Below the pieces are notes generated by a model. The model worked only from the letters and a program-made list of their open reading frames with translations. It ran no database searches and had not been told where the DNA came from. This document shows, one piece after another, positions 28,486 through 62,177 of a stretch of 64,000 nt of DNA (within the stretch, counting starts at the first letter, position 1; every line of letters starts with the position of its first letter). Origin of the DNA: Camelus ferus (lineage: Eukaryota); NCBI RefSeq assembly GCF_009834535.1, contig NC_045705.1:56482001-56546000 (forward strand). Reading direction: 5' to 3'. A program made the translations under genes and the position numbers.

Positions 28486-28622
28486 NNNNNNNNNNNNNNN
28501 NNNNNNNNNNNNNNNNNNNNNNNNNNNNNNNNNNNNNNNNNNNNNNNNNNNNNNNNNNNNNNNNNNNNNNNNNNNNNNNNNNNNNNNNNNNNNNNNNNNN
28601 NNNNNNNNNNNNNNNNNNNNNN
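28486..28622. other. N run (137 nt)
   Basis: Undetermined bases adjoining the Tigger-like element. Confidence 1.
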
Positions 28623-31885: not shown

Positions 31886-33077
31886 AAGCTAAAGAGGTGA
31901 AGTACTTTGCCCGAGATAGAATTGTGGAGCCCAGGACCAAGCACCTGTAAAATGAGAACAATAGAATAATGGTTTCTGTAAAATAAATTGAGTCAGTCCA
32001 TGTAAAATGCTCAGAGCAGTGCCTGACTTATAGTCTACTCAAGGAGTGCTTGGTATTATTATTAATGCATAATACGCTGTCAATTCCCTAACACGTTATA
32101 AAAACATTTTGGATTTAGAAACTATTTTCTCTGTCTAGCTGATTTATTCATTCAGCAAATATGTATGCAGCAATAACTGCATGACAGCAACCATTTAGGT
32201 GCCGAGGATACAACAGTGACTAAGACCGTCTTGGCTTTTCCCTTTACTGACTGGTAACAGACTTACAAGGTGAACACATAAAAACTGTGCCAAGAGCCTG
32301 CCGTTGATCATTCAAGTTCTGTGTCCACACTTGTGGCCCTGGCAGAAATCTCAAGCTTCTTGCGGTAATGAATTCATAAATATGGGTTTAATTAACATCA
32401 GATGACCTTTGTTTTATCTTCCAAGTGATGTTTGTTCATGTCTACTACTAACATATCCCTGAGGAAAGTGTCTTGGCATGTTAGTGAGTATCACTGCAGA
32501 GGTTTACAGGGGGTGGAGAAGATATTGCTGGTTCCCTTATACCTTACACTGGAGTGTGCAACACGAGAAAGCAAACTGAACATAGAGGCAGTGGGCTTCC
32601 AGCATATTACCTTTTCTGCACCTTGAAGTATGTACATAGACATAGAAACATGCTAGAGAGTGAGGCTGGGGATATTTCTGGCCTTATTTTGGGTACTGAA
32701 ATACCACATGGGTAAGTTCTCTTAAACAGACCAGTGCTGGTTTGGCGAGCATGTGGAGGTAGAATAAGAATGGTCTGGTGAACAAACCCAGAAGAGAGTC
32801 AGAGGTGACCAGGTGAATGAAAACAGAACTCCCAGCATCCCAACGCTCGGACATCCCAAGATGTCCCTTCTGTGGTGTGAGTAGCATGACCCAGTCAGAA
32901 CTTCAGTTGGGAAGGCCAGTGCTTATTATTAAACAAGGTCAATAAAGGGTCCAAATGAGGAAGTTATTTTTTTCAGTCACTAAGTATTCCTTGAATAGCT
33001 CCCTTTTCTCCTCTTCTCAGCGTTCACTGCCTCCACCTGGTTTTATTCACATTCTAAGGAGAGTGTGGTGGGGAGCC

Positions 33078-33503
33078 ATGGATCCCGCAGCACTGGTGGA
33101 AGCCGTTGTGGAAGAAGTGGCCTGTCCCATCTGCATGACCTTCCTGAAGGAGCCCGTGAGCATTGACTGTGGCCACAGCTTCTGCCACGGCTGTCTCTCT
33201 GGGCTCTGGGAGGTCCCAGGAGAATCCCAGAACTGGGGTTACTCGTGTCCCCTCTGCCGGGCTCCCGTCCAGCCAAGGAACCTGCGGCCTAATTGGCAGC
33301 TGGCCAATGTTGTAGAAAAAGTCCGTCGGCTAGGGCTGCATCCAGGGATGGGGCTGAAGGGCGACATGTGTGAACCCCATGGGGAGCACCTGAGGATGTT
33401 CTGCAAAGAAGATGGCCTGATCCTGTGCGAGGCCTGCAGCCGGTCCCCTGAGCATGAGGCCCACAGTGTCATGCCCATGGAGGATGTCGCCTGGGATTAC
33501 AAG
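33078..33503 (+). CDS. TRIM68: TRIM68 coding exon 1 (RING + B-box2; 426 nt)
   Basis: Acceptor ttctcAG at 33019-33020; ATG 33078 MDPAALVEAVVEEVACPICMTFLKEPVSIDCGHSFCHGC...CPLC...CEPHGEHLRMFCKEDGLILCEACSRSPEHEAH...WDYK; donor AAG|GTGGGA. Confidence 0.95.
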
Positions 33504-34596
33504 GTGGGAAATGGAGGCCAGCCCCGCTGGACTCTTCCCCTGCCCCTCACTTGGCTATGTCTAGATCAAGAATTTGACTGGAGCCCCAGAGACAAAATGA
33601 GAACTAATTCCCTTGGCTTCTCACATCCCCAGCTCTGGGGGCCTGCCTGAGAACAGTGAGCCACACCTCTCCTTGCATGAATGACCTCCTTTGACTTCCT
33701 TCCCTCCCATTTCCACACCTCACCCCCAGTCCCAGCATGCCTTAATGCCTAACCCAAACTTGCTTTCTGTACTGAGAATTTGTGGGAGAGCAGTTTGGTT
33801 TAGCTGGGGTTCTGGGTGCCCTGGATGAGGTCATCAAAGTGGTGCGTGTCAGAACCTGCAGACTCCTAGCAGTGCCACAGCTAATCACTCGACATCAGGT
33901 GAGTCATTTTAAACTCATTTTATAGACAAAAGTAGGGCTTAGAAATGTGAGATCACAATTATTGGCTTTAGAGCTAGAAGGAACTGTGGCTGAGTCGTTT
34001 AGGATTGAGTGATAGTGTCCAATCTAATGTTGTAGGGTCCTTTCTGACTTTAGGTTAAGTTAGTCAAAGAAAGATCAAAGGCTAGGACTCGGGTCTTCCT
34101 GCTCTTTGGCAGGTGTTCTTTCTCCTCTCCCTAGCTTTTATTTATTGGAAGAGGTGGTGAGGAGCCATCTCTGACACCTGCTGCTCCTTTTTTCGAGGTA
34201 CCCTCAGCAACTTCTAACTTGTTCTTTCCTCCAGTGTCCATGCTGAGTGTCTTTATCTGAATCATCCCAATAATTCTGTGATCCATTCATCCAGTACTGG
34301 TCTTAATTTTCTCTCTTGAAGTTGAGATTAGGAGGAAATTAGCTGTTTTCCTATGTGAGAAGAATTTCTGAAATACTAAAATTATTTACTTACTCATTTT
34401 ATTTTGGGATTATTAGAATATGGAGGCAGTACAGCATAGGCCTAAGAGTTAAAGAGCTGGGTTAAGTCACAGCCCGGCCATTTACTAGCTGAGTGACTTT
34501 GGATAGGTCAGTTTTCTTGATGAATCTTTGATAAAATGGTTATTGTTATGAGAATACTTTATGCTTTCCAGTAGTAATCTTCTGCGTTAGTATCTA

Positions 34597-34770
34597 GGAT
34601 GGTGCTTCTCACCTTTAATGTGCATATGGGCCACCTGAGGGTCTTGCTAAAATTCAGATTCTGATTCAGGAGGTCTGGGGTGAGGCCCGAGAGTCTGCTT
34701 TTCTAACAAGCCCCCAGGTGATGCTGATACTGCTGACCCACGTGGATCACGCTTTGAATAACAAGGTTTT
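34597..34770. mobile_element. MER5A (hAT-Charlie) in a TRIM68 intron
   Basis: gtgcttctcacctttaatgtgcat...cagattctgattcaggaggtctggggtgaggcc...tctaacaagcccccaggtgatgctgat. Confidence 0.75.
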
Positions 34771-35093
34771 AGGAGGTCATAGGATAACAAGGCAGATAAG
34801 GATAAAAAGAGGCATGGATAGGAAAGTCCAAGGTAGTTTTCTGGCAGGGTTGGAAACAGAGCTTTTCTTCTACTTTACAAACAGTCAGAGGCTGTGGGAG
34901 TTGAACTGATTCTCAGGTGAAGAGACCTTGGATGTTATCTGGACAGGAATCCGCTCCCTCTGTGACATTCCCATTTCTTCCATCGTTCATCCTGGCTCAT
35001 TGCCTGAGGGATTCTTGTTTTCCCATCACCTACCAATGCTTGGAAGCCTGGCTCTCCATCCAGGTGGCCTCATGAGGTTTTTATCTCTTTCAG

Positions 35094-35189
35094 TGGAAAC
35101 TGCATGAGGCTCTGGAACATCTGAGGAAGGAGCAAGAAGAGGCCTGGAAGCTGGAAGTCAGTGAGAGGAAGCGGACTGCCAACTGGAAG
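35094..35189 (+). CDS. TRIM68: TRIM68 coding exon 2 (coiled coil; 96 nt, GC donor)
   Basis: Acceptor tttatctctttcAG; translation WKLHEALEHLRKEQEEAWKLEVSERKRTANWK; the frame-preserving donor is AAG|GCAGGT. Confidence 0.9.
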
Positions 35190-35980
35190 GCAGGTTGCCA
35201 CCTGGGAGAAGGAGTCTCTGTGGTCCTTTGTTGTCTTGGAGGTGGCCCAGGATGGCTTCCTCACCTCTGAGAGGCAGTGTGGGGCCTGAGGTCAGAGAGC
35301 CTGGGGTCCTCGCGCCAGCTTTCTCTACCAGATGTGCTGCCTTACGCAGGCCCTGGAGCCACTTAGTTCAGCTTCTTGACCGTGACGTGGGGACAACTCT
35401 GGGCTTACGTCCTCACGCATGAGAAAGGAGAAGTGCACACCTCGTGTATGCTCTAGCTCACAGTGGTGTTACTAAAGTATTGGAAAAATCATCCGGGAAA
35501 TAAACTCAAGGCCCATAACTATCAAACTGTCAGAACTTTTGACCAATCGAAGATAACACTAAACCAGTCTAAAACATGTTGGGCTGATATAATACTAGGA
35601 AGAAGCAAAAGCATCTAACAGTCTAGTTGTTAAACTGTTTTACAAGCTTAAAGTATAACGCTTCTTGTCAGTGTTCTGAAAATAGAATATATTGTTTGAA
35701 AATGGAAGATAGTCTAGAGCATAGAGTAAGTACCAAGCTAATATCCTGGGCCCTGCTGCGGTCAGTAAGAGCTAGTAGTAGGGACCCAGAAGCCTGTACT
35801 GAAGCTGTGGGAGCAGGAAGGTAAGGAAATAGTATCTTTTGTGTTTGCCCGTGCAGTACCTGGCCCACGGTGGGCAGCACAACATTCAGAGTGTGTGTAT
35901 ATGCACGTGCCACTGTCCTCGCTCCTGGGGGGCCCTTGCACAAACAGTATCTGTGCCAATTTCTGATCTTGGTTCTGTAG

Positions 35981-36241
35981 GTACAGGTGGAAACCCGAAA
36001 GCAGAGTATCATGTGGGAGTTTGAGAAATATCAGCGGTTACTAAAGAAAAAACAGCCACCAGGACGGCGGCTGGAGGTGGAGGCGGCTGCAGCTCTGGCC
36101 AGCCTAGAGCAGGAGGAAGGGGAGACCGTGCAGAAACTGGAGTCGAATCACAATGCGCTCATCCGGCAGAGCCGGGTCCTGTGGAAGATGATCACGGAGC
36201 TGGAGGAGAGGTCCCAGAGGCCTGTCCGCTGGATGCTGCAG
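35981..36241 (+). CDS. TRIM68: TRIM68 coding exon 3 (coiled coil; 261 nt)
   Basis: Acceptor ttctgtAG; translation VQVETRKQSIMWEFEKYQRLL...RSQRPVRWMLQ; donor CAG|GTGAGG. Confidence 0.93.
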
Positions 36242-36683
36242 GTGAGGAGAGGTTTTCCCAGGAACACTGAGCCAGAGCTGAAGATGGCCCAGGACTCTAG
36301 AGAGAGGATCAGCACTTTGCCCGCCAGACATAGCCCCCACACCCACTGTAATGCCAGCTGTTCCGCTACCCCTGGTTGGGTGCGTGGCCTGGCCCATTGC
36401 AGTTGTGGCCTCATGGATGGGGCAGAGTTTAGGCAGCTCTGGCATCATACCAGTCCCTCCCCTCTGGCCAGAGAGTGAGATGGAGCCTGAAGTTGGCCAG
36501 TCCAGCTAGAGCTCAGCCTGCCCTGCACCCCTCTCTAGGCTTCTCCCCCTCTACCCCTGCATGCCTTCTCTCCAGCCTGGCTCTCTGCCTGCCTTTCCCT
36601 TAGAGAAACCCCCTCCCAGAGCTCTGTGTCTCCCTCTGAGGAACAAGCATACTCATGTGCTGCATTTCTTTTTCTCTTTCTAG

Positions 36684-36706
36684 GGTATTCAGGAAGTCTT
36701 AACCAG
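36684..36706 (+). CDS. TRIM68: TRIM68 coding exon 4 (23-nt micro-exon)
   Basis: ttttctctttctAG|GGTATTCAGGAAGTCTTAACCAG|GTATGT encodes GIQEVLT(R). A 23-nt exon is typical of the TRIM5/21/68 family and keeps the frame. Confidence 0.9.
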
Positions 36707-37283
36707 GTATGTTCCCATCTTTGGAGCCCCTAGACAGCCCTCTAAGGGATAGTGGGGCCTGGCCGGAGCCAGAAGTGGGGAAGGAACATAGACTAAGTAC
36801 CTATAGAAAAGTGAGTGCTGGTCCACAATCTTCTCCCTCTTCCATTGTATTGGCTAAGGAAGCTTTGAACATCTTTCTCTTTTCTTCTGTGTACTTGGCC
36901 AGATTCATTTCAGGCATTACCAATAAGAATTTCAGGTAAAGTTGTAAAATGTATGGCTTCAAGTAGATGGCCCAAGAAGGGAAAAGACTGCGGATGTAGC
37001 TTCTAAGTCTGTGTATCAGCTGTTCTCCTCCGTGGTACACCTCTTCCTCTCCCAGAGTCAAATTCACATCCCATCCTCCCCGTGGCCTAGGGATGTGAAT
37101 GTTCTCTGTGTCACAAATCGTCCAGCTCAATCAAATAATCCTCATGTCTCTGCTTTGCCTGGTGTTGCTGGGGAGGGCAACTCACTGACTGTGGCCCTGG
37201 CCAAAACCCTCCTCCCTGTGCTAAGGGAAGGCCCATGTGCAGAGCCAGGACTTATGGCCCCAAGGCCTCCCCCTCTCTATCAG

Positions 37284-37384
37284 GAGCAAGTCTTGGAGCC
37301 TGCAGCGACCAGAGCCGGTCTCACTGGAGCTGAAGACGGACTGCCGCGTGCTGGGGCTAAGAGAGATCCTGAAGACATATGCAG
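37284..37384 (+). CDS. TRIM68: TRIM68 coding exon 5 (101 nt)
   Basis: Acceptor ctctctatcAG; translation SKSWSLQRPEPVSLELKTDCRVLGLREILKTYA; donor CAG|GTAAAG. Confidence 0.92.
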
Positions 37385-37538
37385 GTAAAGAGTGCTGGGC
37401 GGGACTGTGATGAGCAGTGGGGGGACCCCTCCTGAAGGACCGAAATGGTTCCATACCTCTGAGTGCCCTGCCCAGCAGAGACCTCACCCAGGCCCCCTGG
37501 TTCTGGGCCAGGGGACCAACCACAGTCTTTTTCCTTAG

Positions 37539-38089
37539 CGGACGTGCGCCTGGATCCAGACACTGCCTATTCTCGCCTCATCGTGTCTGAGGACCGAAAA
37601 TGCGTGCGCTACGGAGACACCAAGCAGAAACTGCCTGACAATCCTGAGAGGTTTTACCGCTACAATATCGTCCTGGGCAGTCAGTGCATCTCCTCGGGCC
37701 GACACTACTGGGAGGTGGAGGTGGGAGACAGGTCCGAATGGGGCCTGGGTGTGTGTAAGGAAAATGTAGACCGGAAGGAGGTGGTCTATCTGTCCCCCCA
37801 CTATGGCTTCTGGGTGATTAGGCTGAGGAAGGGCACTGAGTACCGGGCAGGCACCGATGAATACCCGCTCCTGTCCCTGCCCGTCCCGCCCCGCCGGGTG
37901 GGAGTCTTCCTGGACTACGAGGCCCACGATATCTCCTTCTACAATGTGACTGACAACGGCTCTCACATTTTCACCTTCCCCCACTATCCCTTCCCTGGGC
38001 GCCTCCTGCCCTATTTCAGTCCTTGCTATAGCATTGGAGCCAACAACACCGCTCCTCTGGCCATCTGCTCCCTGGATGGGGAGGACTAA
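37539..38089 (+). CDS. TRIM68: TRIM68 last coding exon (PRY/SPRY, B30.2; 551 nt)
   Basis: Acceptor tttttccttAG; translation ADVRLDPDTAYSRLIVSEDRK...SGRHYWEVEVG...RVGVFLDYEA...LDGED*. The six exons sum to 1458 nt = 485 aa plus stop. Confidence 0.96.
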
Positions 38090-43002: not shown

Positions 43003-43977
43003 TCATGAACCCCGGCTGAAGTGGTCAAAGAGGCAGTGCATCAGCAAGCTCCTTGTTCGCTTTCGTATCTGTTCGGTTCTCAGGCCATAGATGATGGGGT
43101 TTAAGGTGGGTGGGATGATCACGTACAAGTCAGCTAACAGCACTTGGGTGTGCGAAGGCACTATGTCCTTCCCTAGCCAGGCCACATAGATGGATGCCAT
43201 CCCAGGTAGGTAGTACAGAGCCATAACTGCCACATGGGAGCCACATGTGCTTAATGCTTTCAACTGTGCATTCTTTGAGGAGAGACCAAATACAGCCTGG
43301 AGAATCAGATTATAGGAGGCAGTAATAAAGAACACATCAGAACCCACCATAATAGAGGACCCAGTCAGGCTGTAGAGACTACTGGGCATGGGATCAGCAC
43401 ATGCCAGCTTGGCCACAGCTATATGCTCGCAGTAGGAATGGAGAACAACACTAGAGCCACAGAAAGGTAGATGACTCACCATCCAACTCAGTGGAGTCAT
43501 AAATATGATAGCTCTGATGGTGATGGTCACACTCATTCCCAGCATCACTTGAGGTGTGAGAATCCTCTTGTAGTGTAGGGGCTTACAGATGGCTACATAG
43601 CGGTCAAAAGCCATGGCTAACAGCAGCCCCGACTCCACAGCTGTGGCTGCATGGACAAAATACATCTGAGTGAAACAAGCATTAAAAGTGATGGAGCTGT
43701 CTCCTGAGGAGAAGATGCTCACCATCTTGGGCACTACAGAGGAGGCCATAACAATGTCCACGGCAGCCAGAACACACAGGAAGCAGTACATGGGCTCCTG
43801 TAGAGTGGAATCCACCCAGATTACGGTCGCTATGAGGGTGTTTCCTAACAGGGTTATGGTATACATGACACTCAGTGAGATGGCCAGCCATAGATGTGAA
43901 GACTGCAAACCTGGGATGCCCACCAAGAAAAAGGTGCCAGGGGTTTCCATTGTATGGTTGTAGGGTGGCCCCAGCAT
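43003..43977 (-). CDS. OR52I1: Olfactory receptor 52I1/52I2-like (324 aa)
   Basis: MLGPPYNHTMETPGTFFLVGIPGLQSSHLWLAISLS...MAFDRYVAICKPLHY...KALSTCGSH...PTLNPIIYG matches recalled human OR52I1/2. The first ATG is at 43977 (the track starts at an upstream GTG). It cannot be assigned to I1 versus I2. Confidence 0.9.
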   Translation of the reverse strand: MLGPPYNHTMETPGTFFLVGIPGLQSSHLWLAISLSVMYTITLLGNTLIATVIWVDSTLQEPMYCFLCVLAAVDIVMASSVVPKMVSIFSSGDSSITFNACFTQMYFVHAATAVESGLLLAMAFDRYVAICKPLHYKRILTPQVMLGMSVTITIRAIIFMTPLSWMVSHLPFCGSSVVLHSYCEHIAVAKLACADPMPSSLYSLTGSSIMVGSDVFFITASYNLILQAVFGLSSKNAQLKALSTCGSHVAVMALYYLPGMASIYVAWLGKDIVPSHTQVLLADLYVIIPPTLNPIIYGLRTEQIRKRTRSLLMHCLFDHFSRGS

Positions 43978-45909
43978 CACAGATGAGACTGCTTTCCTGT
44001 TAATGTATAAAGTGATGTTAAGGATGCAATCCTGTAAGACTTATTTCCAGCTATGGTGTTAGGAAGTCTAATGATAGTCTCAACTCAGTGGGCCCAGAGT
44101 TAGAAAGCTGACATCTGGGCAAAGGTATCCTGCCTCTCCTCCCATCCTCCTCAATATTCTTTGCCTTACTAATTTCTGTTCGTTATTCAGAGATCATCTC
44201 GTGAGCTGCCTCCTTTGGGCAGTCTTCTCTACCTCCTCCCCCAACCCATGCTGAAACTGAATTAGGTACCTTCAGAGCTTTTATGGACTCTTGTCCATGC
44301 TGATCTCTGAGGGACCTAACTTGACAATCCTAGTACTCTACCTGTGACTTTATTGTGCTCACTTGTGTGTCTTGTTCATGGCCTTATACCTTATACCAGC
44401 CTTATAGCTGTGGTGCACAGGTCCATGGAAAGAAGGCATATGTATTCATTATAGCAAACAGTTGAATGAATGAATGAATGTGAAATCAGAGGAAAGAGTT
44501 TTCCTTTTATCTTTGTTCAATTCCAAACAATATTTAATAATTGTTGAATGAAACAGTGAACTTCCTGAGATTGAATGTGTCACACTTTGCATCTCCTTCC
44601 TCAAACTCTCACTGCCCTAATGCTGTATCTCTCAAGGCCCTAGGCTAGTGAGTCACCACACCAATTGTATGACTAGTTGACTTTACAATAGTCATATAAA
44701 GCCCAGGAACTATTTCCTAGGTGTCCAGGCAGTTTTAAATGAAGAGGGCTTATTTGCCAAGGCTCAAGACTAACCTGCCCTTAACTATCACCTCCTGTCT
44801 TTCCCCTTAGTAAGGGACTTTCAGGCTAAGAACTCTTCATATCTTTGGACACTGTCTTTACTTCACCCTTTTTGATTTTTCATCAGGCCTGGCTTCTCCC
44901 TGAAATATTGGGTAGATCAGATTGACAGAGTACTAGCCTCAGAATCCCATCAGCTGCAGTAGCATTTTCTTTGTTAACCAAGCACTAGACAAACATTTAC
45001 CTGGTTCTCAATTCTAACCAGGTGGCATGCATTTGCCTCTTCCATTAACCCCTGGAGAGCCAACCACTCACTGGCTGATTCCACTCACTCACTGATTCCA
45101 CACCCAGGTACCAACAGCAGCCTTGATGAGAGTCCCCAGAATGCCAGATTTCTGGGATGATTGCAAACTATGATCTTTATTGAAACAGACAAACCAACAA
45201 CAACAAAAAATCCCTAGACATAAGAAATGCCTTATAATGGAACAGAGTGAATAAAGTAATGAGCTCTGTTTCACGGTCAGAGGCTTGCTGTTCCACTGGG
45301 TGAAACATCAGTGACAGATCTAGAGAGGATAAGGGGAAGCTTTTTGAAGTAGAATGGTAGTAAAGAGTGGAATTATTTCATTCAGGATATCCTTAAGACT
45401 GCTGTGTGTTTCCTGGATGCAGCAAACTTCAGGTTGAGCATTATTCCTTAAAAAGCCAAAGAAGAGCCTGAGGACCCAGAATGCCTCCCCTACCCCCTCA
45501 CCTCTGATCCAGGATCTCCCTCCCACGTCACTGCCCTGCACAAATCCACATTTCTTCTGAGAGCAGTCTCAGCTGCTGCCTGCCCAGTCCTCCTCTATCT
45601 AGCCTTGGCAACTTGAAGCTAGTCATACGTTTCATTCCCTCGAGGCTTTTCCCTCATTCCTTTTCTTCTTGATTAGCAGTGCTAAAGGTTTATGTATCTT
45701 ATTAGTCCTTTCAAACAACAGGACATTTAGTTAGGTTGGTCTTTTTTTTTTTTTAATCTTCAGTCTACTGCTGCTGAAAATGTTCTTGCTAAGATCAACA
45801 ATGCTCTCCATCAGTGACATGCTGCCAATGCAGTGTTTTCATTCTTTATTTTACCTGACCTACCTAAAATATTTAACAGTATTGCCTGCTCCATGCTCAT
45901 TTTTGGGTT

Positions 45910-49959: not shown

Positions 49960-50900
49960 TTTTTAAATGAAGTATAGTTGACTTACAATGTCATGTTAGT
50001 TTCAGGTGTACAGCATAGTGATTCAGCTATATATATACATTTTTTTTCTCTTTCTCAGATGTTTCCCATTATAGGTTATTACAAGATACTGAATATAGTT
50101 CCCTGTGCTATAGATTAGGTCCTTGTTGCTTGTCTATTTTATATATAATAGTGTGTATCTTTTTAATCTGAAACTCCTACTTTATCCCTCCCTCACCCCT
50201 TTCCCCTTTGGTAACAATAGTTTGTTTTCTATGTCCATTAGTCTGTTTCTGTTTTGTAAATAAGTTCATTTTTATTATTTTTTTAGATTCCAGATATAAG
50301 TGATATCGTATGATATTTCTCTTTCTCTGACTTATTTCACTTAGTATNNNNNNNNNNNNNNNNNNNNNNNNNNNNNNNNNNNNNNNNNNNNNNNNNNNNN
50401 NNNNNNNNNNNNNNNNNNNNNNNNNNNNNNNNNNNNNNNNNNNNNNNNNNNNNNNNNNNNNNNNNNNNNNNNNNNNNNNNNNNNNNNNNNNNNNNNNCAA
50501 GTCTTGGTTTTTGTAAATAGTGCTGCTATGAACATTGAGGTGCGTGTATCTTTTCAAACTAGAGTGTTTTTGTCTTTTTGGATATATGCCCAGGAGTGGG
50601 ATTGCTGGCTCACATGATAACTCTATTTTTAGTTTTTTAAGGAACGTCCATACTGGCTGCACCAAACTACATTCCTACCAGCAGTGTAGAAGGGTTCCCT
50701 TTTCTCCACACCCTCTCCAGCATTTATTGTTTGTGGATTTTTGAATCATGGCCATTCTGACTGATGTGAGGTGATACCTTATTGTAGTTTTGATTTGCAT
50801 TTCTCTGATAATTAGTGATATTGAGCATTTTTTCATGTGCCTGTTGTCCATCTGTCCATCTTCACTAGAGGAATGTTTAGGTCTCCTGCCCATCTTTGCA
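49960..50900 (-). mobile_element. 5'-truncated L1 (ORF2 C-terminus plus 3' UTR)
   Basis: Minus-strand ORFs give [39 protein letters not shown] and [29 protein letters not shown] (L1 ORF2). Poly-T at about 49960. Older L1 fragments continue at 49200-49950. Confidence 0.93.
50348..50497. other. N run (150 nt)
   Basis: Undetermined bases inside the L1. Confidence 1.
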
Positions 50901-53586: not shown

Positions 53587-54249
53587 ACATTATGCTGGAT
53601 ACTAGGTAACTCGGCAGGCAAAAGCACCTAGAACAACTACCCTCCAGAGCTTTCAATCTGACAAGGAAGAAAGAGAACAATCAGCTTATCAAACAAATGT
53701 ATTCACTTCCATGTGTGCCTTGGGATTTCTAAGGAAAAGTTGTTTGAGACTTGGTGGGAGCATAGGCTTCCTAGGTGGAAATAAGTTTAGGCTGTGACCT
53801 GACAGCTGAATAGACCATTTACAAAGTGTTTGTGGGTGAGGTGGAGACCGAACTTTGAAGGGAGAGACACAGCCGTGTGCAAAGACATCAAGGCTAGGTA
53901 GAGAATGGTACCTTAGAAGGACTAAGAGGACTACAAGAGCCCCAGGACGTCCTTCTGACAGGTAAGATTAGAACCGTTTTCATTTTTCTTTAAACAAGGG
54001 AAGTCACTGAAGTGTCTAAGCAAGGGTCACTTGTGATCTGATTTGTGTTTTCGCAAGTTCTATTCCTTTGCACTGAGACCTAGAGCAGAACGGGGCAGAG
54101 CAGTAGCAGAGACTTGGGTGCGTACTGCATGCAGAGTTAGGGAGCGGCAGGTAGTTCCTTTAAGATACCTGATTTTGAAGCACTGTAACCTCGGACCTGA
54201 ATTGTCCTGGTGTTGGCTCTCTTTTGTGTAATTTCTAGGGCTTTAGTGT

Positions 54250-54790
54250 TCACGGTGTGGCATCTCAGCCTGGCTGCTCTGGTGTCATCTGGGAGCTTGT
54301 TAGAAATGTGCAATCTTGGATCTCACTTTGGTTTAATGAATCAGAAACTGCATGTCAGGAAGAGCTGCAGGTTAATTGAATACAGGTGATTAGAGTAACA
54401 CTGCTTAAGGTACAAGACTCAAATTAGGTTGCATGTTAGGGACACCTGGCTAGTCTGAGGAACTGTTTCTATCTAGTTCCCACCACCAGAGACCCAGATT
54501 TAACTTTTCCCTGAATCTAATGATTTTGAACAAGTCCCCAAGAACTTCTAATGTACAGTGGATGTACATAAGAAGTAAAGATGGGACTTTCAGAAATGTC
54601 TCCCCTATGACAGTTGTTCTCAAAGTTTGGTGGCCAAAGGAATCATCTGGAGGGCTTTTCATAATACAGATTTGGGCTTCATCCCCAGAGGATCTAACTC
54701 AGTAGGTCTGGGTCCATATTTTATTACTTTCAAGTTCCTACCTGATGCTGAAGCTAGTGGTGTGGGGACCACCCTTGGAGAAGCACTGCT
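54250..54790. mobile_element. Cluster of MER5-family fragments
   Basis: catctgggagcttgttagaaatg, gaatcagaaactgcat, cagttgttctcaaagtttgg...gaatcatctggagggctt...ctcagtaggtctggg. Confidence 0.65.
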
Positions 54791-55119
54791 TTAGAGCGTA
54801 TAGTGATTTTGGAAAATTTGCAATTAACAATCACCTTCCATAAGACAGGCATGAAAAATACAGCCTGTTCATAGATTTTGTCCCTGAGCAGCCATAAAAT
54901 CTTTTGTTTATCTATCCTTTTTGTTTGCTATTTTTTGTAATTTCTAAGTCTATAACATTCACTTAAAATTATGACACATGTGAAAGTAAAAATAATTTAA
55001 AATGTATTACATTTCTGAATGGAAATGCCCAGACCAAGCTGTATTTGAAGGCTTAAAAAGTAGGCAGAAGCTTGCATCAATTCCTGGATTTTCTTGAGAA
55101 TCATGATTTTAAGAGCATC

Positions 55120-55600
55120 TGTCAACAACAGAAAAACAATGCAGGAGGCTGCAAATAAGAAAAGAGTTTATTTGGGGGTAATAAGAATTCCAATTCAGTA
55201 GACACAGTTTCAAGTATCTTCAAATGACTGTTCCAGGGAAGAGAAAGTGTCAGGGGCTTGCAAAGAAAAAAGCCATGAAGTTACAAGTTGCTTCACAAGA
55301 ATCAGGATGGACCCTGATGCAAATATTTCTCTCTTTAAGGAGAAAATATTTGTCCTTAAAGTATCAGGAGCTATTTTAGGGGAAATTTCTATAAGTAGAT
55401 CAGCTGTCACAAGTTATTTTTAGGTTAAGAGTCCAGTAAGTATCTTGAGTAACTAGCAGATGTTCTGGATGACCTCATCAGGTCTAAAGGTCAGATTCTA
55501 TCCCAGCTGAGACATGCATAAATCACACTTCCTCAGTGGCCTCCTGGTTCCATTTTAGAGCTGTCTCTTAGCAATACTGTGAAGACTTTGGTTTTCCTTC
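55120..55600 (-). mobile_element. Ancient LTR (MER34/MER39-like)
   Basis: aaaagagtttatttgggggtaataagaattccaattc...ccattttagagctgtctc blocks. Family uncertain. Confidence 0.45.
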
Positions 55601-56010: not shown

Positions 56011-56465
56011 TCTGCAATAAAAATATATATATACAAAAAAAGTGCAACTATACTTGTAATTATAGGTATAATTGAATTGGATGTAAGTTCTAAATTTTGA
56101 AACAGATTATCCAAACAAATTCATGAACATTTCACTGCAGTGTAACAACATTTTTACAGTCAGCCCAGTTGACTTAATCACTAGGCTAACTGTAGAAATT
56201 TGGTCAATCTCAGACCTCATCCACAGTGCAAAACAACACAGCCAACTCCAGATTTCAAAAACTCCTGCTGGGTGCTGTTGAGATGTAGTGGTTGAGTCAA
56301 TCCAATCAATTCCATTGTTCTCATAATTAGATTAGAACTCACCAACCCAGATTGAATCAGTAAAGAACTAGGTATTTCTCCTGCACAGTTTTTATGTGAC
56401 AGAATTAACTCTCCTTACCAGTTAATGTCTGATTCAGAGTTTTTAAGTCTGTAACACTTGTTTAG

Positions 56466-58460
56466 TCAACTATGGAAATGAGTAGAAAAAAAGTAATACA
56501 AATATTATATTCTGAGTATGAGGTGCTCAGACAGAGTTGTATTTGAAGACATGATAAAGGAGGTGGCATTTACCTGGCTCCCTCCAGTGTCATTAGGAAT
56601 TGAAGAAAATCAAATGGAGAAAATTTGATGTTTCTGTAACTTGTGAGCCACTATCAGCAGGGATGATTTCCAGAAGTTGCTATTGACACTGGTGGATCAT
56701 TTTATTAATTTATGGGCAGAACTAGGGATATCATGCTATGATTTAACAAAATTGTACTTCTAGAGTATCCATCATACCTAAAAAAAAAAAAAATGACCAG
56801 CAACCATTGTAATTCTTTGTATCATTGAATTAGGTGTACATTTAGAAATTTCTAACACCTTTTCCACATGCATGTCCTCAGGTCATTGGAGTGGCCCATG
56901 CAACTGCAATGGTCTGGTTGTTTTGCCCACATTAATACCAGCCCCAAACACACCTCAACTGACAAGGCTGACCAATTTAAAAATGCTTCCAGTTAGTACA
57001 CAAACGCTTGTGAATAATGAGAGATTTGGATGATTTAATCACTGGATTATTTTGAAGATAGGACTAGGTTCTCCAGTCAGAGCCCACAGTCTAAAAGCTT
57101 TCACTAAAGAGCTAACAACAGCCATCAGTGAAGAGAACTGCTCCCCCCAGCTGCAGAGGTGACCAAATATAAAACTAGTTTCTGTTACTCTAACTATGCT
57201 AGTTGGAAGAAAAAAGATGTCCCCAGGTGATCATCACCCTGGCTTCAGAGTCCCCTACGCCACTGAAGACCATCCTTCTAGCTGAAGAATCAAGTGACTG
57301 GCATCCGGCCCTCGTCACCATGCAGAGTGGCTGTGGCATGTATGAGTAACGTGGACAGGAGCATGGAGGCCCACGGCATTGTCAGGGTGAAAGGGTTCAG
57401 TATCAGGTCTTTTGGAGCTACATCCCATGTGAGGCCTTCGGGACTGGCACCCAACCATTCAATCAACTGTGCCAATAGAGGGAAAGCAACTAACAGTACA
57501 TGTATTCTGAATGTGGAGTGTTCACACAGAGCCCTACGTGGCAACATGATAAAGGAGGCAGAGGCTGCCTTGCTCTGCTCCCTCCCAAATCATTATGATT
57601 TGAAGGAAATCAGATGGAGAAAATGCAGTGTTCTTTTAACTTATGAAACACTATCAGCAGGGATGTTTTCCAGAAGTGGTTTTTGACACTGGTGGATCAT
57701 GTTATTCATGGGCAGAACTATGGATATCTTGCTAGGATTGAACACAATTCTAATTCTAGAGTATCCATTGTCTGTGGGGGGAAAAAAGTGCTATAAGCAT
57801 TGTGATTTCGTGTCTAACTGATTTAGGTAGGCTTGGAAATTTCCAGCACCTTTTCCACACATGTCCTCAGGTCACTGGAGGGGCTGGTGACCAGCCTGCC
57901 TGTAGCCTAGTTGTTTGCCTAACATCAGTAGTAGCCCCAGACCCACAGGAGTGGGACTGGGCTCACTATAGATTGCAAAATGCTCCCTGGGGTAGCTACA
58001 CCCTTGCAGAGCATGAGAGGTTCGGGTGATTGAATCTCTGGGGTGCTCTGAGGACCAGACAAGTTTCTGTGGTCACAGCCCATGATGTTCACCCAATCAA
58101 TCGAGAGCTAACATAATCAATCCATCTGGAGCTAACACCATCAATCAAGAGTTCTCCACCCACTGCCCAGAGGTGACTCCACATAAACCCACATCTCTTT
58201 GACCCTTGGCTAGTTGGCAAGAAGAGTTGGACCGGGGACGGTCATCTCCCTGGCCTCAGAGTCCCCTCGGACCCTGAGGCCCACCTGTCTGGCTGGAGTC
58301 CAAAGTAGCCGCCATCACCATGCCCTCTTCCCCACTCAGGGTGGCTGTGGTGTGCATGAGTAACATGAACAGGAGCATGGAGGCCCACGGCATCCTCAGG
58401 AGGAAAGGGTTCAATGTCAGATCTTTCGGAGCAGCATCCCAAGTGAGGCTCCCGGGACAG
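56466..58460 (+). repeat. Old head-to-tail tandem duplication, unit about 1.0 kb (about 56466-57460 and 57463-58460)
   Basis: Colinear anchors: tcaact (56466/57463), acatgataaaggagg (about 56551/57544), cactatcagcagggatg...ttccagaagt...ttgacactggtggatcat, tctagagtatccat, cagaggtgac, gctagttgg, cagagtcccct, and ATG (57320/58320). Confidence 0.9.
57320..57456 (+). pseudogene. Truncated, frameshifted 5' fragment of the SSU72-like gene
   Basis: The ATG at 57320 is followed by a ~14-nt deletion relative to the intact copy. The shifted frame reads RVAVACMSNVDRSMEAHGIVRVKGFSIRSFGATSHVRPSGLAPN and then homology stops. Confidence 0.9.
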
Positions 58461-58904
58461 CCAGGCAACCCTCCAGTGATTTACGATTTCTCGGTGACGT
58501 ACGGGCAGATGCGCAAGGACCTTTACCGGAGAGACCGAGAACGCTATAGAAGCAATGGCGTCTTGCACATCTTGGGAAGAAATGAGAAAATCAAGGCCCG
58601 CCCAGAAAGATTTCAAGAGTGCAGAGATGCCTTCGACGTCATCTTCACCTGTGAGGAGCGCGTCTACGACAGGGTGGTGGAAGACCTGTGTGCCCGAGAA
58701 CAGGACACCTGCCAGCCGGTGCACGTCATCAACGTGGACATGAAAGACACCCTGGAGGACGCCACCCTCGGGGCGTTGATCATCTGTGAGCTGTGCCAAC
58801 GCCTCCAGCAGGCGGACGACGTGGAAGGCAGTGTGGCGGAGGTGCTCCTGTCAGCGGAGGAGAAAACGGGAAGAAGCTTCCTTCACACCATCTGCTTCTA
58901 CTGA
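58320..58904 (+). CDS. SSU72-like RNA polymerase II CTD phosphatase, intronless retrogene (194 aa; SSU72L family)
   Basis: Full-length ORF MPSSPLRVAVVCMSNMNRSMEAH...SFLHTICFY, the same length as SSU72. It keeps C12-x5-R18 and D140/D143, has no introns, and has a Kozak context gccatcaccATG. Motifs such as ILRRKG and HILGRNE resemble the recalled human SSU72L paralogues more than parental SSU72. Confidence 0.93.
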   Translation: MPSSPLRVAVVCMSNMNRSMEAHGILRRKGFNVRSFGAASQVRLPGQPGNPPVIYDFSVTYGQMRKDLYRRDRERYRSNGVLHILGRNEKIKARPERFQECRDAFDVIFTCEERVYDRVVEDLCAREQDTCQPVHVINVDMKDTLEDATLGALIICELCQRLQQADDVEGSVAEVLLSAEEKTGRSFLHTICFY

Positions 58905-59476
58905 GGCTCTCGGCTGGTTTGGGTTCCTTCCGCGGTCAGACCTTGTGCGTGGACTTTTAGACTAGTCTGGATTTTTTGACAAAAGTGTCTTGAAAGCCCT
59001 TTCCACTAAAAGCCATTTGTATGATTTTTCAGGTTTTTCAAGAAATAGACCAGAAAAGCATTTTATGGGAAAGGGAATGTGGACTACCAGTAGTCATCAA
59101 AACCCTTCCAGTGTGGGGGACAACTTTTTATGGATTTTACCTTCAAGCAACAATTCAGTGCTCACATTGCTCTGCAAGGAAGTTACCATGAAGGACTTCC
59201 ATTTTCCAGATGAAGAAAGCAAGGCTTATAATGAAGTGCTGGACAAGTGATTTGTTGAAAATTATTCAGAAAAAAAACAGTGTCTATTCTATCATTTTAT
59301 AACAATTTCCTTTTGCTCATTTTGCATGATATATTAATTATAAAAGGGTGAGTTTTTTGTGAGATAGGAATGTATTGAATGCCTGAAGGTATAGATGCAT
59401 TTATTTTTAGATTATATGTCTTTAACAAATGCCATCTTCACTGGAAACTCAGGGTTGATCATCTGCCACATGTTAT

Positions 59477-60074
59477 TGAGACAGGAAGGGGGAAGGGCAC
59501 AGCTGGTCAAGGAATAGCACAGCAATTAACACCAGAATGGCGGAAGGTTCAACCCCTAGTAGGCCTTGAGGCTCAGGACGGAGGGAGATTTGACTTCTAG
59601 TAGACAGTGAGCTTCATTATACTCCTATTGTAATATATTAACATGGTGAATAACATGCCCACAGGCGCCATGACAGTCCCAAGGCTGGCCTCAAGAGGTC
59701 AAAGAGTGGGAAATGGCCAGTTTCCTGGGAATCCCAGCCCCTTCCCCAGACAAGTTAGACTGGTCCTTCCACCTTACTAAGATATAAAGCTACCGAGCCC
59801 ATAAAAACTGGCCTTCAGGAACAGCCCGCACTTTGTCTATGGAGTATGTACATACTTTTACTCTAAGCTGAGCACCCAAACCCCACACCTTATGGCCTTT
59901 CTCTTGCCTTCTGATGTATCTCTGTAAATAAATCTACCTGTATTCAACTGTGGCTCACTCTTGAATTCTTTCCTGCGCGAAGCCAAGGACCCACACTTGG
60001 TGGGGCACGTCCCAGGGACTCAACCAAAGCCTGGGACATGGCCCTCATGCCCCACATCCGTTTTTCCTGCATCA
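59477..60074 (+). mobile_element. Solo ERV1-type LTR, family B, with 4-bp TSD TTAT
   Basis: Runs TGAGACAGG...CCTGCATCA; TTAT at 59473-59476 and 60075-60078; AATAAA at 59927-59932; ctcttgaattctttcctgcgcgaagccaag block typical of ERV1 LTRs. Confidence 0.85.
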
Positions 60075-60186
60075 TTATGACTAAAATCTAGGAATTATCT
60101 GTTCAATTAAATAGTTCATCATATGAAATGAAATAAAAACATCTAATTTAAAGAAAAGGTGTATTCTTGTTTCTGGTAGGGGAAAG

Positions 60187-60471: not shown

Positions 60472-61604
60472 GATGGATTATGACAACATGAGCCCCTTGG
60501 TTTCTTACTGTTAAAGCTCTATGAGTGACATGGGGAAAAGCACTCTCTCAAAGGAGAATTTTATTAAACTGAAAATGTTCATGATTTGGATATTGGGGTC
60601 CTCGGAAAGTGGATCCTCACTCCTGGGAAGTGAAACGTTGGTGATGATCAGCAGTGTCACCAAGGCTTGTGTGATTTCCAGGAGGAAATAAAGACAGGTC
60701 GGTGACAGAGTTGAAGGAGTTCACTTGCTGTGTAAGGAAGCAGATGTCAGCTTGCTTTATGGCGTGTAGCCAGGGTGGAGCAGGGGTGGGCCTGGAGGGA
60801 GCAGCTAGTACAGTCATTCTTGAGAAGACGAGGGGCCTGGGAGTCGGGTGGATGGCTCTCGACAGGCGGAGTAGATGGCCTCTATGATCGTGCTCCTTAT
60901 GGTGGCTATTCGCCTTTTCTCCATTCATCCCTTGCTTGAGCAGTGTCTGCTTCACCTCTGCCTTTCTCACATACCTACATATTTGCCCCAGGCCCAGCTA
61001 ATGACTGTTTTAGCTTTAGATCAGAACTCTCCTCTCTGCTTATCAAAGGGGCAGTGTGGGCTGTGCTTCTCGGCTGGTCTCCCTGTGAACTGTTGAAGCA
61101 ACCTGAGGTCAATTCTTCTTGTAATCGGTACCCTCCCCCTGCTTCAGGGCATGAAGACTGCAGCTGTGTCCGGCCCCATTGTCAGCAGCACTTGGTCGCG
61201 TTTTGCTCCCGGACCTTGCTTCAGACATGTAAGTACCACTATCTGTGAAACCATTTATGTCTCCGTCCCTGACTCTGGGCTCTCTTTGGTCCTGAAGCCG
61301 TGCAAGTACAGGTATTGCAGACCTGTGTGGGGTAGCCCAGCAGTGTCGGGTCATGGAGAGCTGCTGGAGTTGAAATGACAGGACTTGGTGAAGAGGAGAG
61401 AGAGGGGAGAATTTTGAATCGCTCTCAGTTTTCTGTCTTTGACCACAGGCGTACAGGTCCACATACCTGCATGTGGCAGTGCTGGTGGTGGGTGGTGAGT
61501 GTTCTTTCCGGCTAGATTCACTGTCCTTTCTAAGTTTCTTAGCGGATGGTGGGTAGTCCAGGTCAGGATCGGGAAGGGACAGGGATCACTTCAAAATATG
61601 GGAA

Positions 61605-62177
61605 TGATGCAGGAAAACGGATGTGGGGCGTGAGGAGTGCAGAGTCCCGGGTCTCGGTTGAGCCCCTGGGACGTGCCCCGCCAAGTGTGGGTCCTTGGCT
61701 TTGCAAGGGAAAGAATTCAAGTGTGAGCCACCGTTGAGTAAAGGTAGATTTATTTAGAGAGACACAAACTGCATAGAGTGTAAGGCAAGAGAAAGGCAAG
61801 GAAAGAGTGTGGGAATTGGGTGCTCAGGTTAAAGGAAAAATAGGTACACACTCCACAGACAGAGTGCGGGCCGTCTCCAGAGGGGAGAGAGCGAGCGCGC
61901 AAAGGGCCACTAGGCGTGGTGTTGTCACTTTTTATGGTCTCAGTAGCTTCACACACCTACAGGTGGGATCAATCCAACTGCCCTGGGGAAGGGGCTGAGA
62001 TTACCAGGAATTGGGCCTTTTGCAGTTAGCCTTGGGTCTGTCATGGCGCCTGCGGGCGTGTTATTTGATCACGCTGTTAGGAGCATATAATGAAGCTCAA
62101 GGTCTACTGGAAGTCAAACTTCTTAATCCTTAAGGCCAGCTAGGAGGTGAATCTTCCACCATTTTGGTCCTGTCTCA
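61605..62177 (-). mobile_element. Solo ERV1-type LTR, family B, inverted, with 4-bp TSD GGAA
   Basis: The reverse complement begins TGAGACAGG and ends CCTGCATCA, like 59477-60074; GGAA at 61601-61604 and 62178-62181. Confidence 0.85.

What the first reader, a model, noticed from the sequence alone, without database searches (positions are those of the whole stretch)
58320..58904. Intact, heavily diverged SSU72-like CTD phosphatase retrogene inside an olfactory receptor cluster
Seen: an intronless 194-codon ORF with no stops or frameshifts, a good Kozak context, the catalytic P-loop C12-x5-R18 and D143. Established: SSU72 is a highly conserved Pol II CTD Ser5/Ser7 phosphatase that works with symplekin. 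From memory of the parent, this copy changes the P-loop (CSSNQNR to CMSNMNR), the substrate loop (KLPGPAPDKPNV to RLPGQPGNPPVI) and many surface residues. Inference: an ORF this diverged but unbroken implies purifying selection and possibly a new, perhaps germline, substrate or partner. Related SSU72L copies exist in the human 11p15.4 cluster but, as I recall, further away (beyond TRIM21/OR52B4) rather than next to OR52I. This may therefore be a separate, poorly characterised family member.
Basis: partly seen in the sequence, partly recalled or inferred. Interest (0 to 1): 0.7.

Follow-up and report, generated by a model that had tools for sequence, protein, structure and literature searches.

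The report
Camel SSU72-like phosphatase retrogene, already annotated
This is an intact, selectively maintained camel copy of the SSU72L family, an old intronless offshoot of the RNA polymerase II tail phosphatase SSU72; databases already annotate it, and its odd residues are shared by the whole family rather than unique to camels.

Summary
The ORF is real: window 58320-58904 (+), 194 codons. It matches Pfam Ssu72 over its full length and human SSU72 end to end without gaps, at 64% identity. C12, R18 and D143 are kept. All four parental coding introns are absent, so it derives from a processed retrocopy.

It is not a separate lineage. In a maximum-likelihood tree it sits inside one clade (support 100/100) of intronless SSU72-like genes from primates, tree shrew, bat, carnivores, horses and rhinos, and cetartiodactyls. 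That clade includes macaque "SSU72 like protein 2". The P-loop changes are common across the clade, and the substrate loop is its most variable stretch.

The exact protein is already in NCBI and UniRef, and is identical in four Camelus assemblies. The alpaca orthologue is 97% identical and named "SSU72 like protein 3-like".

Purifying selection is clear. Omega is 0.25 across 11 orthologues, far better than omega = 1. Camel-alpaca divergence in the CDS is half that of the flanks.

The gene lies 14 kb from an OR52I-like receptor. A dead partial duplicate lies 1 kb upstream and is shared with a beaked whale.

Transcription was not shown: the RNA libraries that hold the locus also hold an intergenic control. 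Function is untested.

The parts
58320..58904 (+). SSU72L coding sequence: 194 codons plus stop, single exon
   Evidence: ORF. Pfam Ssu72 over the full length. Gapless alignment to human SSU72. Colinear with pig SSU72 cDNA across all four intron sites. AlphaFold2 model pLDDT 91.8, TM 0.96-0.98 to human SSU72 4h3k_E.
57588..58319 (+). 5' flank of about 730 bp shared with SSU72L copies of other orders and with the tandem duplicate. It presumably holds the promoter and 5' UTR.
   Evidence: blastn blocks beginning at camel 57588-57592 in hippo (two copies), rhino, horse and sea lion, 70-74% identity. No detectable similarity to the 5' UTR of pig SSU72 cDNA, z = -0.5. CpG observed/expected 0.08-0.27, so not a CpG island.
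58905..59280 (+). Conserved 3' flank, probably the old 3' UTR, ending in an A-rich run at 59268-59279. The run may be a poly(A) remnant of the retrocopy.
   Evidence: Cross-order alignments end at 59225-59279 in hippo, whale, rhino, horse and sea lion. The A run is visible. No similarity to the pig SSU72 3' UTR, z = 0.5. No AATAAA or ATTAAA before 59927.
56370..57457 (+). Dead, truncated tandem duplicate: 5' flank plus codons 1-50 only. The start codon is lost and homology ends after codon 50.
   Evidence: tblastn aa 2-50 at 57309-57455, 69% identity. Pfam Ssu72 E = 6.5e-11 on the first 45 profile positions. The alignment to the main copy shows ATG replaced by CGG plus a 3-nt deletion. The paralogous 5'-flank match runs from 56370. 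The same fragment lies about 1 kb upstream of the gene in alpaca and Mesoplodon.
43003..43980 (-). Neighbouring intact OR52I1/OR52I2-like olfactory receptor gene (context)
   Evidence: Pfam 7tm_4 E = 1.4e-81. Best named hits are 'olfactory receptor 52I2-like' and '52I1-like', 85-88% identity.

Best explanation
The ORF is the camel member of the SSU72L family (the 'SSU72 like' genes, HGNC SSU72L1-6 in human). The family began as a processed, intronless retrocopy of the Pol II CTD phosphatase gene SSU72. The retrocopy inserted in the class-I olfactory receptor region no later than the common ancestor of primates and laurasiatherians. It then spread by tandem duplication of a unit of about 1.7 kb: roughly 730 bp of 5' flank, the CDS, and about 370 bp of 3' flank. 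Camelids keep one intact copy plus one dead partial duplicate. Shown: the coding sequence has been held open by purifying selection, with constraint much weaker than on the parent gene. Inferred: the protein folds like SSU72 and keeps the Cys12 nucleophile, the CX5R phosphate-binding loop (including N15, N17, R18 and S19) and the general acid Asp143. It is therefore most likely an active cysteine phosphatase of the Ssu72 type acting on phospho-Ser-Pro substrates such as the Pol II CTD, probably in a restricted tissue or stage. The family-wide changes at P-loop positions 13 and 16, and the hypervariable substrate loop and cap, could shift substrate or partner preference. Nothing here tests that. 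My confidence is about 0.95 for the identity and evolutionary history and about 0.5 for 'active CTD-type phosphatase'.
For: Identity: Pfam full-length match; gapless match to human SSU72; model TM 0.96-0.98 and rmsd 1.1 A to 4h3k_E. Retrocopy: all four coding introns of the parent are absent. Family membership: a 37-tip clade with UFBoot/SH-aLRT 100/100 and stem length 0.27 holds strepsirrhines, Cebus, colobines, tree shrew, fruit bat, carnivores, perissodactyls and cetartiodactyls. The camel and alpaca sit inside a Cetartiodactyla subclade supported 100/98. The P0022 cluster in that clade contains macaque and green monkey 'SSU72 like protein 2' and a Pan 'SSU72L2-like' protein. Shared derived residues are N53V, M84I, K89E, N100E, L107V, Q118R and I162L. 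Already annotated: the exact protein is in NCBI, UniRef and nr on 4 contigs, and is identical in four Camelus assemblies, with one synonymous difference in one of them. The alpaca orthologue XP_072826872.1 is 97% identical. Selection: pairwise dN/dS 0.18-0.29. GY+F3X4 omega is 0.251, lnL -3338.3, against -3459.2 with omega fixed at 1. Every 30-codon window has omega 0.12-0.33. Camel-alpaca divergence is 1.54% in the CDS and 3.23% in 19.4 kb of flanks, p = 0.009. Neutral survival is 0.66%. Positional conservation: the same upstream truncated fragment occurs in alpaca and beaked whale, and a same-strand OR relic lies 5-9 kb downstream in camel, whale and sea lion.
Against: Transcription is not demonstrated. 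RNA-labelled libraries hold the locus (shares 0.77, 0.76 and 0.56; unique 3'-flank depth 4-17). The same studies also hold an intergenic control 3-5 kb upstream (shares 0.42-0.46), so DNA carry-over explains much or all of the signal. No canonical poly(A) signal lies within 1 kb of the stop. No homology to the parental UTRs and no target-site duplications were found, so the retrocopy origin rests on intron loss plus an A-rich run. The camel-alpaca dN/dS of 0.56 rests on only 9 substitutions and does not by itself exclude recent relaxation. Enzyme activity, substrate and symplekin binding were not testable. One hippo paralogue has C12S, so not every family member need be catalytic.
Confidence: 0.8

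Rival explanations
1. Neofunctionalised paralogue. The protein is active, but the family-wide remodelling (M13, a hydrophobic residue at 16, V53, and a hypervariable loop 47-51 and cap helix) has moved it to a substrate or partner other than the symplekin-bound Pol II CTD. A germline- or embryo-specific phosphoprotein is one possibility.
For: Seven sites invariant in canonical SSU72 from fish to pig are replaced by one different residue in at least 80% of SSU72L proteins. The stem branch of the clade is long, 0.27. The variable positions cluster in loop 41-51 and helix 65-78, where omega is highest, 0.27-0.30. From memory, low-molecular-weight PTPs carry hydrophobic residues at the matching P-loop positions (CLGNICRS), so M13 and M16 fit an intact P-loop with an altered pocket.
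Against: No window reaches omega > 1. Catalytic and most groove-lining segments (LPG 44-46, YDF 55-57, RPERFQ 94-99, NVD 138-140) are kept. I could not obtain the published list of symplekin or CTD contact residues, because Xiang 2010 is not held. The location of the changes relative to those interfaces is therefore untested.
Confidence: 0.3
2. Non-catalytic or regulatory protein, for example a decoy that competes with SSU72 for symplekin, or for the CTD, without turning over substrate.
For: Constraint is far weaker than on the parent: omega 0.25, against a canonical protein that is almost invariant across vertebrates (branch lengths about 0). Some paralogues have lost catalytic residues: hippo P0025 C12S, Nasalis R18G, Trachypithecus N17S.
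Against: The camel protein keeps C12, N15, N17, R18, S19, D140 and D143. These are at least 90% conserved across the clade, which is hard to explain without catalysis.
Confidence: 0.1
3. Unexpressed pseudogene whose frame is open by chance or through gene conversion from other copies.
For: Transcription was not shown. There is no nearby poly(A) signal. A dead partial copy lies next to it.
Against: Omega is 0.25, with a log-likelihood gain of 121 units over omega = 1. The CDS is half as diverged as its flanks between camel and alpaca. Simulated neutral survival is 0.66% before counting indels. The window holds no intact donor copy for gene conversion.
Confidence: 0.04

Closest known systems
SSU72L family (human SSU72L1-6, formerly SSU72P pseudogenes; NCBI 'SSU72 like protein 2/3/6-like' in other mammals)
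   Same: Intronless 194-aa Ssu72-domain ORF in the same strongly supported clade. It shares the derived residues. It lies in the class-I olfactory receptor region with tandem copies. HGNC now treats at least SSU72L2 as protein-coding (PMC12807706).
   Different: Camelids keep a single intact copy plus a stub. Rhino has at least 4 identical copies 9.3 kb apart, hippo has at least 4, and human has 5 within 116 kb (PMC13732488). The camel copy lies 14 kb from OR52I. By the T2T coordinates in PMC13732488, plus my memory of the TRIM68 position, the human cluster lies a few hundred kb away. I could not test whether that is a true positional difference. Camelid-only residues are Q47, V59, G62 and Y69.
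Canonical SSU72 (Pol II CTD Ser5/Ser7 phosphatase; PDB 3o2q, 3o2s, 4h3k)
   Same: Same length, with no indels. Same fold: TM 0.96-0.98, rmsd 1.1 A. Same CX5R loop, Asp143 and C-terminal FLHT(V/I)CFY.
   Different: Only 64% identical. It has no introns, against five coding exons in the parent. Omega is 0.25, against a near-invariant parent. P-loop positions S13 and Q16 are replaced by Met, and the 47-51 loop is rewritten.
Other, independent SSU72 retrocopies (ape and platyrrhine 'SSU72-like' P0112 cluster; cervid, marsupial, mole-rat and colugo copies)
   Same: Intronless-length 194-aa Ssu72 ORFs annotated 'SSU72-like'.
   Different: They branch near canonical SSU72, outside the SSU72L clade. 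They are separate, mostly younger retropositions, and the camel gene is not one of them.

Membership tests
Ssu72 phosphatase family (Pfam PF04722) | Full-length match to the family profile above the curated cut-off | tested here: met
   268.7 bits against a cut-off of 25.3; profile positions 1-189 of 189.
Ssu72 phosphatase family (Pfam PF04722) | CX5R(S) phosphate-binding loop with the nucleophile Cys12 and Arg18 | tested here: met
   C12-M-S-N-M-N-R18-S19, aligned gaplessly to human C12...R18.
Ssu72 phosphatase family (Pfam PF04722) | General acid Asp143 in the D-loop | tested here: met
   V-D140-M-K-D143 is retained. D143 is at least 97% conserved in the clade.
Ssu72 phosphatase family (Pfam PF04722) | LMW-PTP-like core plus Ssu72 cap fold | tested here: met
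   AF2 pLDDT 91.8, pTM 0.89. Foldseek top hits are human and fly Ssu72, TM 0.93-0.98. LMW-PTPs follow at TM about 0.4-0.5.
Ssu72 phosphatase family (Pfam PF04722) | Phosphatase activity on pSer5/pSer7 CTD and stimulation by symplekin | not testable with these tools
   Needs recombinant protein assays.
SSU72L (SSU72-like) retrogene clade | Groups with named SSU72L proteins to the exclusion of canonical SSU72 | tested here: met
   The 37-tip clade has support 100/100. It includes the cluster holding macaque and Chlorocebus 'SSU72 like protein 2'. Human sequences themselves were not in the set.
SSU72L (SSU72-like) retrogene clade | Single-exon CDS lacking the parent's introns | tested here: met
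   Colinear with pig cDNA 403-988 across the introns mapped on pig genomic DNA.
SSU72L (SSU72-like) retrogene clade | Location in the 11p15.4-type class-I OR / TRIM region | tested here: met
   An OR52I-like gene lies 14 kb upstream. A RING/B-box/PRY-SPRY TRIM gene lies at 32955-38089 and further ORs are present. The exact slot relative to the human cluster was not testable.
Processed retrocopy | Poly(A) tail remnant, target-site duplications and parental UTR homology | tested here: inconclusive
   An A-rich run at 59268-59279 sits where cross-order homology ends. There is no UTR similarity to pig SSU72 cDNA, z about 0. Target-site duplications are not recognisable at this age.
Expressed protein-coding gene | Transcript evidence above genomic background | tested here: inconclusive
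   The locus is held by RNA-labelled runs, but the same studies hold an intergenic control. A 94-nt unique stretch at 60080-60173 had zero depth.

The most novel reading that the evidence does not exclude
SSU72L is a boreoeutherian-wide paralogue of the CTD phosphatase, maintained by selection for roughly 90 million years or more. Its P-loop pocket is remodelled (Met13, a hydrophobic residue at 16) and its substrate loop evolves fast. On this reading it has a substrate or partner distinct from symplekin-bound Pol II CTD, perhaps in germ cells or early embryos. The single-copy camelid gene would then be a clean model for a function nobody has assayed.
Probability: 0.3. Interest if true: 0.5.

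Novelty: already known. Interest (0 to 1): 0.22.

Why it matters
For this window it matters little. The gene is already annotated, and its unusual residues are family traits, not camel novelties.

At the family level there is a real gap. The SSU72L genes were only recently reclassified from pseudogenes to protein-coding in human. My analysis shows clear purifying selection across mammalian orders. I found no paper that tests their activity, partners or expression. The one study that cites an SSU72-like locus appears to have knocked down canonical SSU72 instead. The camelid locus has one intact copy and no intact paralogues nearby. That makes it simpler for expression and knock-out work than the multi-copy arrays of human, rhino or hippo.

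Tried and rejected
I did not resend them and laid only the 3' flank.

2. RNA support. The encouraging first result was rejected as evidence after the intergenic control was held by the same studies. A raw-read single-cell run gave nothing usable.

3. Parental UTR homology. blastn with word size 7, and Smith-Waterman against shuffles, gave z about 0 for both flanks.

4. Primate synteny. The look-up of a Microcebus OR52I protein was not on record, and no look-ups remained. Eulemur and Microcebus loci show no OR within 10 kb either side. Whether the primate and camel positions are orthologous is therefore open.

5. Mapping substitutions onto the symplekin and CTD interfaces. Xiang 2010 (PMC3038789) and PMC3423551 are not held, and other papers give no residue list.

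6. Positive selection. No 30-codon window exceeded omega 0.33. Proper site and branch models (PAML) were not available.

7. Earlier scan notes. Nothing was found by place or by words.
Full report
**Observation.** Window 58320-58904 (+) is an ATG-to-stop ORF of 194 codons.
- It matches Pfam PF04722 (Ssu72) over the whole profile, E = 2.9e-80.
- It aligns to human SSU72 (PDB 3o2s_B) from residue 1 to 194 with no gap, E = 6e-86.
- Identity to canonical SSU72 (pig cDNA L010) is 125/194, or 64.4%.
- The start context has A at -3 but C at +4.
- An AlphaFold2 model (pLDDT 91.8, pTM 0.89) superposes on human SSU72 chains at TM 0.93-0.98, best 4h3k_E at 0.96-0.98 and rmsd 1.1 A. LMW-PTPs are only distant second-tier hits.

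**Origin of the window.** The window is identical over 15.7 kb to GCA_009834535.1 CM020777.1 at about 56.5 Mb, a Camelus assembly.

**Retrocopy nature.**
- Pig SSU72 cDNA maps to five exons on pig genomic DNA, with introns after about CDS nt 80, 224, 364 and 483. The camel ORF is colinear with the cDNA across all four sites.
- Homology to the parental UTRs is undetectable, z about 0.
- Between mammalian orders the SSU72L unit is alignable from about 57588 to about 59270-59280. That is roughly 730 bp upstream and 370 bp downstream of the ORF.
- The downstream edge coincides with an A-rich run at 59268-59279. I read this as a possible poly(A) remnant. That is an inference.

**Local anatomy.**
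- About 1 kb upstream lies a truncated duplicate at 56370-57457, comprising the same 5' flank plus codons 1-50.
- At the position of its start codon, ATG is replaced by CGG with a 3-nt deletion. Similarity stops after codon 50. It is dead.
- Alpaca and the beaked whale Mesoplodon carry the same stub about 1 kb upstream of their intact gene. Camel, Mesoplodon and sea lion each have a same-strand OR relic 5-9 kb downstream. In camel that relic carries a stop and a frame change (my reading of the coordinates).
- The locus arrangement is therefore old, shared at least among cetartiodactyls and in part with carnivores.
- Upstream neighbours are an intact OR52I1/I2-like receptor at 43003-43980 (85-88% to named OR52I proteins) and a RING/B-box/PRY-SPRY TRIM gene at 32955-38089. 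From memory its N-terminus looks like TRIM68; this was not tested.

**Family placement.**
- The best database hit is alpaca XP_072826872.1, 'SSU72 like protein 3-like', at 97% identity. Next come hippo (82%), ruminants and cetaceans (77-79%), and rhino and horse (73-77%). Canonical SSU72 is at about 64%.
- The window's own protein is already in NCBI, UniRef and nr, on four contigs.
- Four Camelus assemblies encode the identical protein, with one synonymous difference in one of them.
- I built a careful maximum-likelihood tree of 77 proteins. All these intronless copies form one clade of 37 tips: strepsirrhines, Cebus, colobines, tree shrew, a fruit bat, carnivores, perissodactyls and cetartiodactyls. 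Support is UFBoot/SH-aLRT 100/100 on a stem of 0.27.
- Camel plus alpaca sit in a Cetartiodactyla subclade supported 100/98.
- The catarrhine cluster in this clade contains macaque and green monkey 'SSU72 like protein 2' and a Pan 'SSU72L2-like' protein. The clade is therefore the HGNC-named SSU72L family.
- Other 'SSU72-like' proteins (apes plus platyrrhines, cervids, marsupials, mole-rats, colugo) branch near canonical SSU72. They are separate retrocopies.

**Which residue changes are camel-specific.**
- Changes common across the clade include M13 (or V, R, K), a hydrophobic residue at 16, V53, I84, E89, E100, V107, R118 and L162.
- Only Q47, V59, G62 and Y69 are camelid-only, plus P48 in camel alone. 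All five lie in or next to the loop and cap region that is the clade's most variable stretch.

**Selection.**
- Pairwise dN/dS of camel against hippo, cattle, whale, rhino, horse, sea lion and lemur orthologues is 0.18-0.29.
- A codon model (GY+F3X4) on 11 SSU72L CDSs gives omega 0.251 and lnL -3338.3. Fixing omega at 1 gives lnL -3459.2.
- All 30-codon windows lie at 0.12-0.33. The highest values are in the substrate loop and cap and in the C-terminal helices. No window exceeds 1.
- Within camelids the CDS differs at 9 of 585 sites (1.54%), against 626 of 19,400 (3.23%) in the flanks, binomial p = 0.009.
- The camel-alpaca dN/dS of 0.56 rests on too few changes to interpret.
- Simulated neutral substitution at 0.31 per site left the frame open in only 0.66% of trials, before counting indels.
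- The gene is therefore maintained by purifying selection, but much less tightly than the parent. Canonical branches are about 0.

**Expression is unresolved.**
- RNA-labelled Logan runs from three 2025 studies, carrying the organism label 'reproductive system metagenome', hold 0.56-0.77 of the sampled words of 57900-59600.
- Laid on the unique 3' flank, they give contigs at depth 4 and 17. Depth is zero in the 94-nt unique stretch 60080-60173.
- As a control I queried an intergenic stretch, 53600-55300. The same studies hold 0.42-0.46 of it.
- These libraries therefore contain camel genomic DNA or pervasive background. The difference (0.77 against 0.42) is too weak to claim transcription.
- The Logan contig L005 (window 57955-59541) ends where an LTR-like repeat begins. 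It says nothing about transcript ends.
- No AATAAA or ATTAAA lies between the stop and 59927, and that first signal is inside the LTR-like element.

**Literature.**
- HGNC changed SSU72P2 to SSU72L2 because the biotype changed from pseudogene to protein-coding (PMC12807706).
- Human SSU72L1-5 lie within 116 kb at T2T chr11:4.29-4.41 Mb (PMC13732488).
- I found no functional study of any SSU72L protein.
- A 2026 sheep and cattle embryo paper highlights LOC114118287 ('SSU72 like protein 3-like') and reports an 18% drop in blastocyst rate after siRNA (PMC13398327). Its siRNA sequence matches canonical SSU72 cDNA (pig) exactly. It is absent from the Bos javanicus SSU72L CDS and from every other SSU72L CDS I hold. 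That phenotype should not be credited to SSU72L.

**Mechanism.** Shown: fold, catalytic residues, intron loss, clade membership and purifying selection. Inferred: the protein is an active Ssu72-type cysteine phosphatase. From memory, LMW-PTPs carry hydrophobic residues at the P-loop positions matching 13 and 16 (CLGNICRS). Met at these positions should therefore be compatible with a working P-loop while altering the pocket. Whether the substrate is still the Pol II CTD, and whether symplekin is still the partner, is unknown.

**Verdict.** This is a correct observation of an ordinary, already annotated member of a known but functionally unstudied gene family.

Noticed in passing
PMC13398327 compared with L010 (pig SSU72 cDNA) and L008:10001-10582 (Bos javanicus SSU72L): The siRNA used to 'knock down' the SSU72-like locus LOC114118287 matches canonical SSU72 cDNA exactly. 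It is absent from every SSU72L CDS I hold. The reported blastocyst phenotype probably reflects canonical SSU72.
   Followed up: partly
window 53600-55300 and 57900-59600: RNA-seq and metatranscriptome libraries labelled 'reproductive system metagenome' (three 2025 studies) hold unique intergenic camel sequence as well as the gene. They therefore carry host DNA or pervasive background and are unsafe as expression evidence in this genome.
   Followed up: yes
window 59531-60076 and 61603-62168: An LTR-like element occurs as an inverted pair, 69-80% identical. It has its own AATAAA at 59927, followed by a primer-binding-site-like TGGTGGGG. RNA-library contig depth over it reaches hundreds to thousands, so the repeat family is abundantly represented.
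   Followed up: partly
L015 and L016 (black rhinoceros, CM036952.1 at about 59.24-59.27 Mb): At least four SSU72L copies encode the identical 194-aa protein, spaced about 9.28 kb apart. This indicates a very recent tandem array or ongoing gene conversion.
   Followed up: no
L007 (hippopotamus) and protein P0025: The fetched hippo stretch holds two intact SSU72L copies 3.1 kb apart plus two decayed copies in 11 kb. Other hippo paralogues on the same chromosome are also annotated. One of them (P0025) has C12S, so it is catalytically dead if real.
   Followed up: no
window 58320-58904 compared with its flanks: CpG observed/expected is 0.68-0.79 inside the CDS but 0-0.35 in the flanking 200-bp bins. 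Other SSU72L CDSs range from 0.23 to 0.70. I have no explanation; germline hypomethylation, constraint and gene conversion are all possible.
   Followed up: no
L001:19021-19918 (about window 67340-68237, just beyond the window): A class-I OR relic lies on the + strand 9 kb downstream of SSU72L. It has a stop and a frame change in camel. A similarly placed OR relic follows SSU72L in Mesoplodon and sea lion.
   Followed up: partly
window 4520-4654, 9546-9703, 28486-28622, 50348-50497: Four N runs of 135-158 bases. Two interrupt olfactory receptor ORFs, at 4426-5067 and 9009-9962.
   Followed up: no
proteins P0112, P0263, P0265, P0266 (apes) and P0082, P0088, P0107 (platyrrhines): The anthropoid 'SSU72-like' proteins of this cluster form their own clade outside SSU72L. 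They represent a second, independent intact-ORF SSU72 retrocopy lineage in primates.
   Followed up: no
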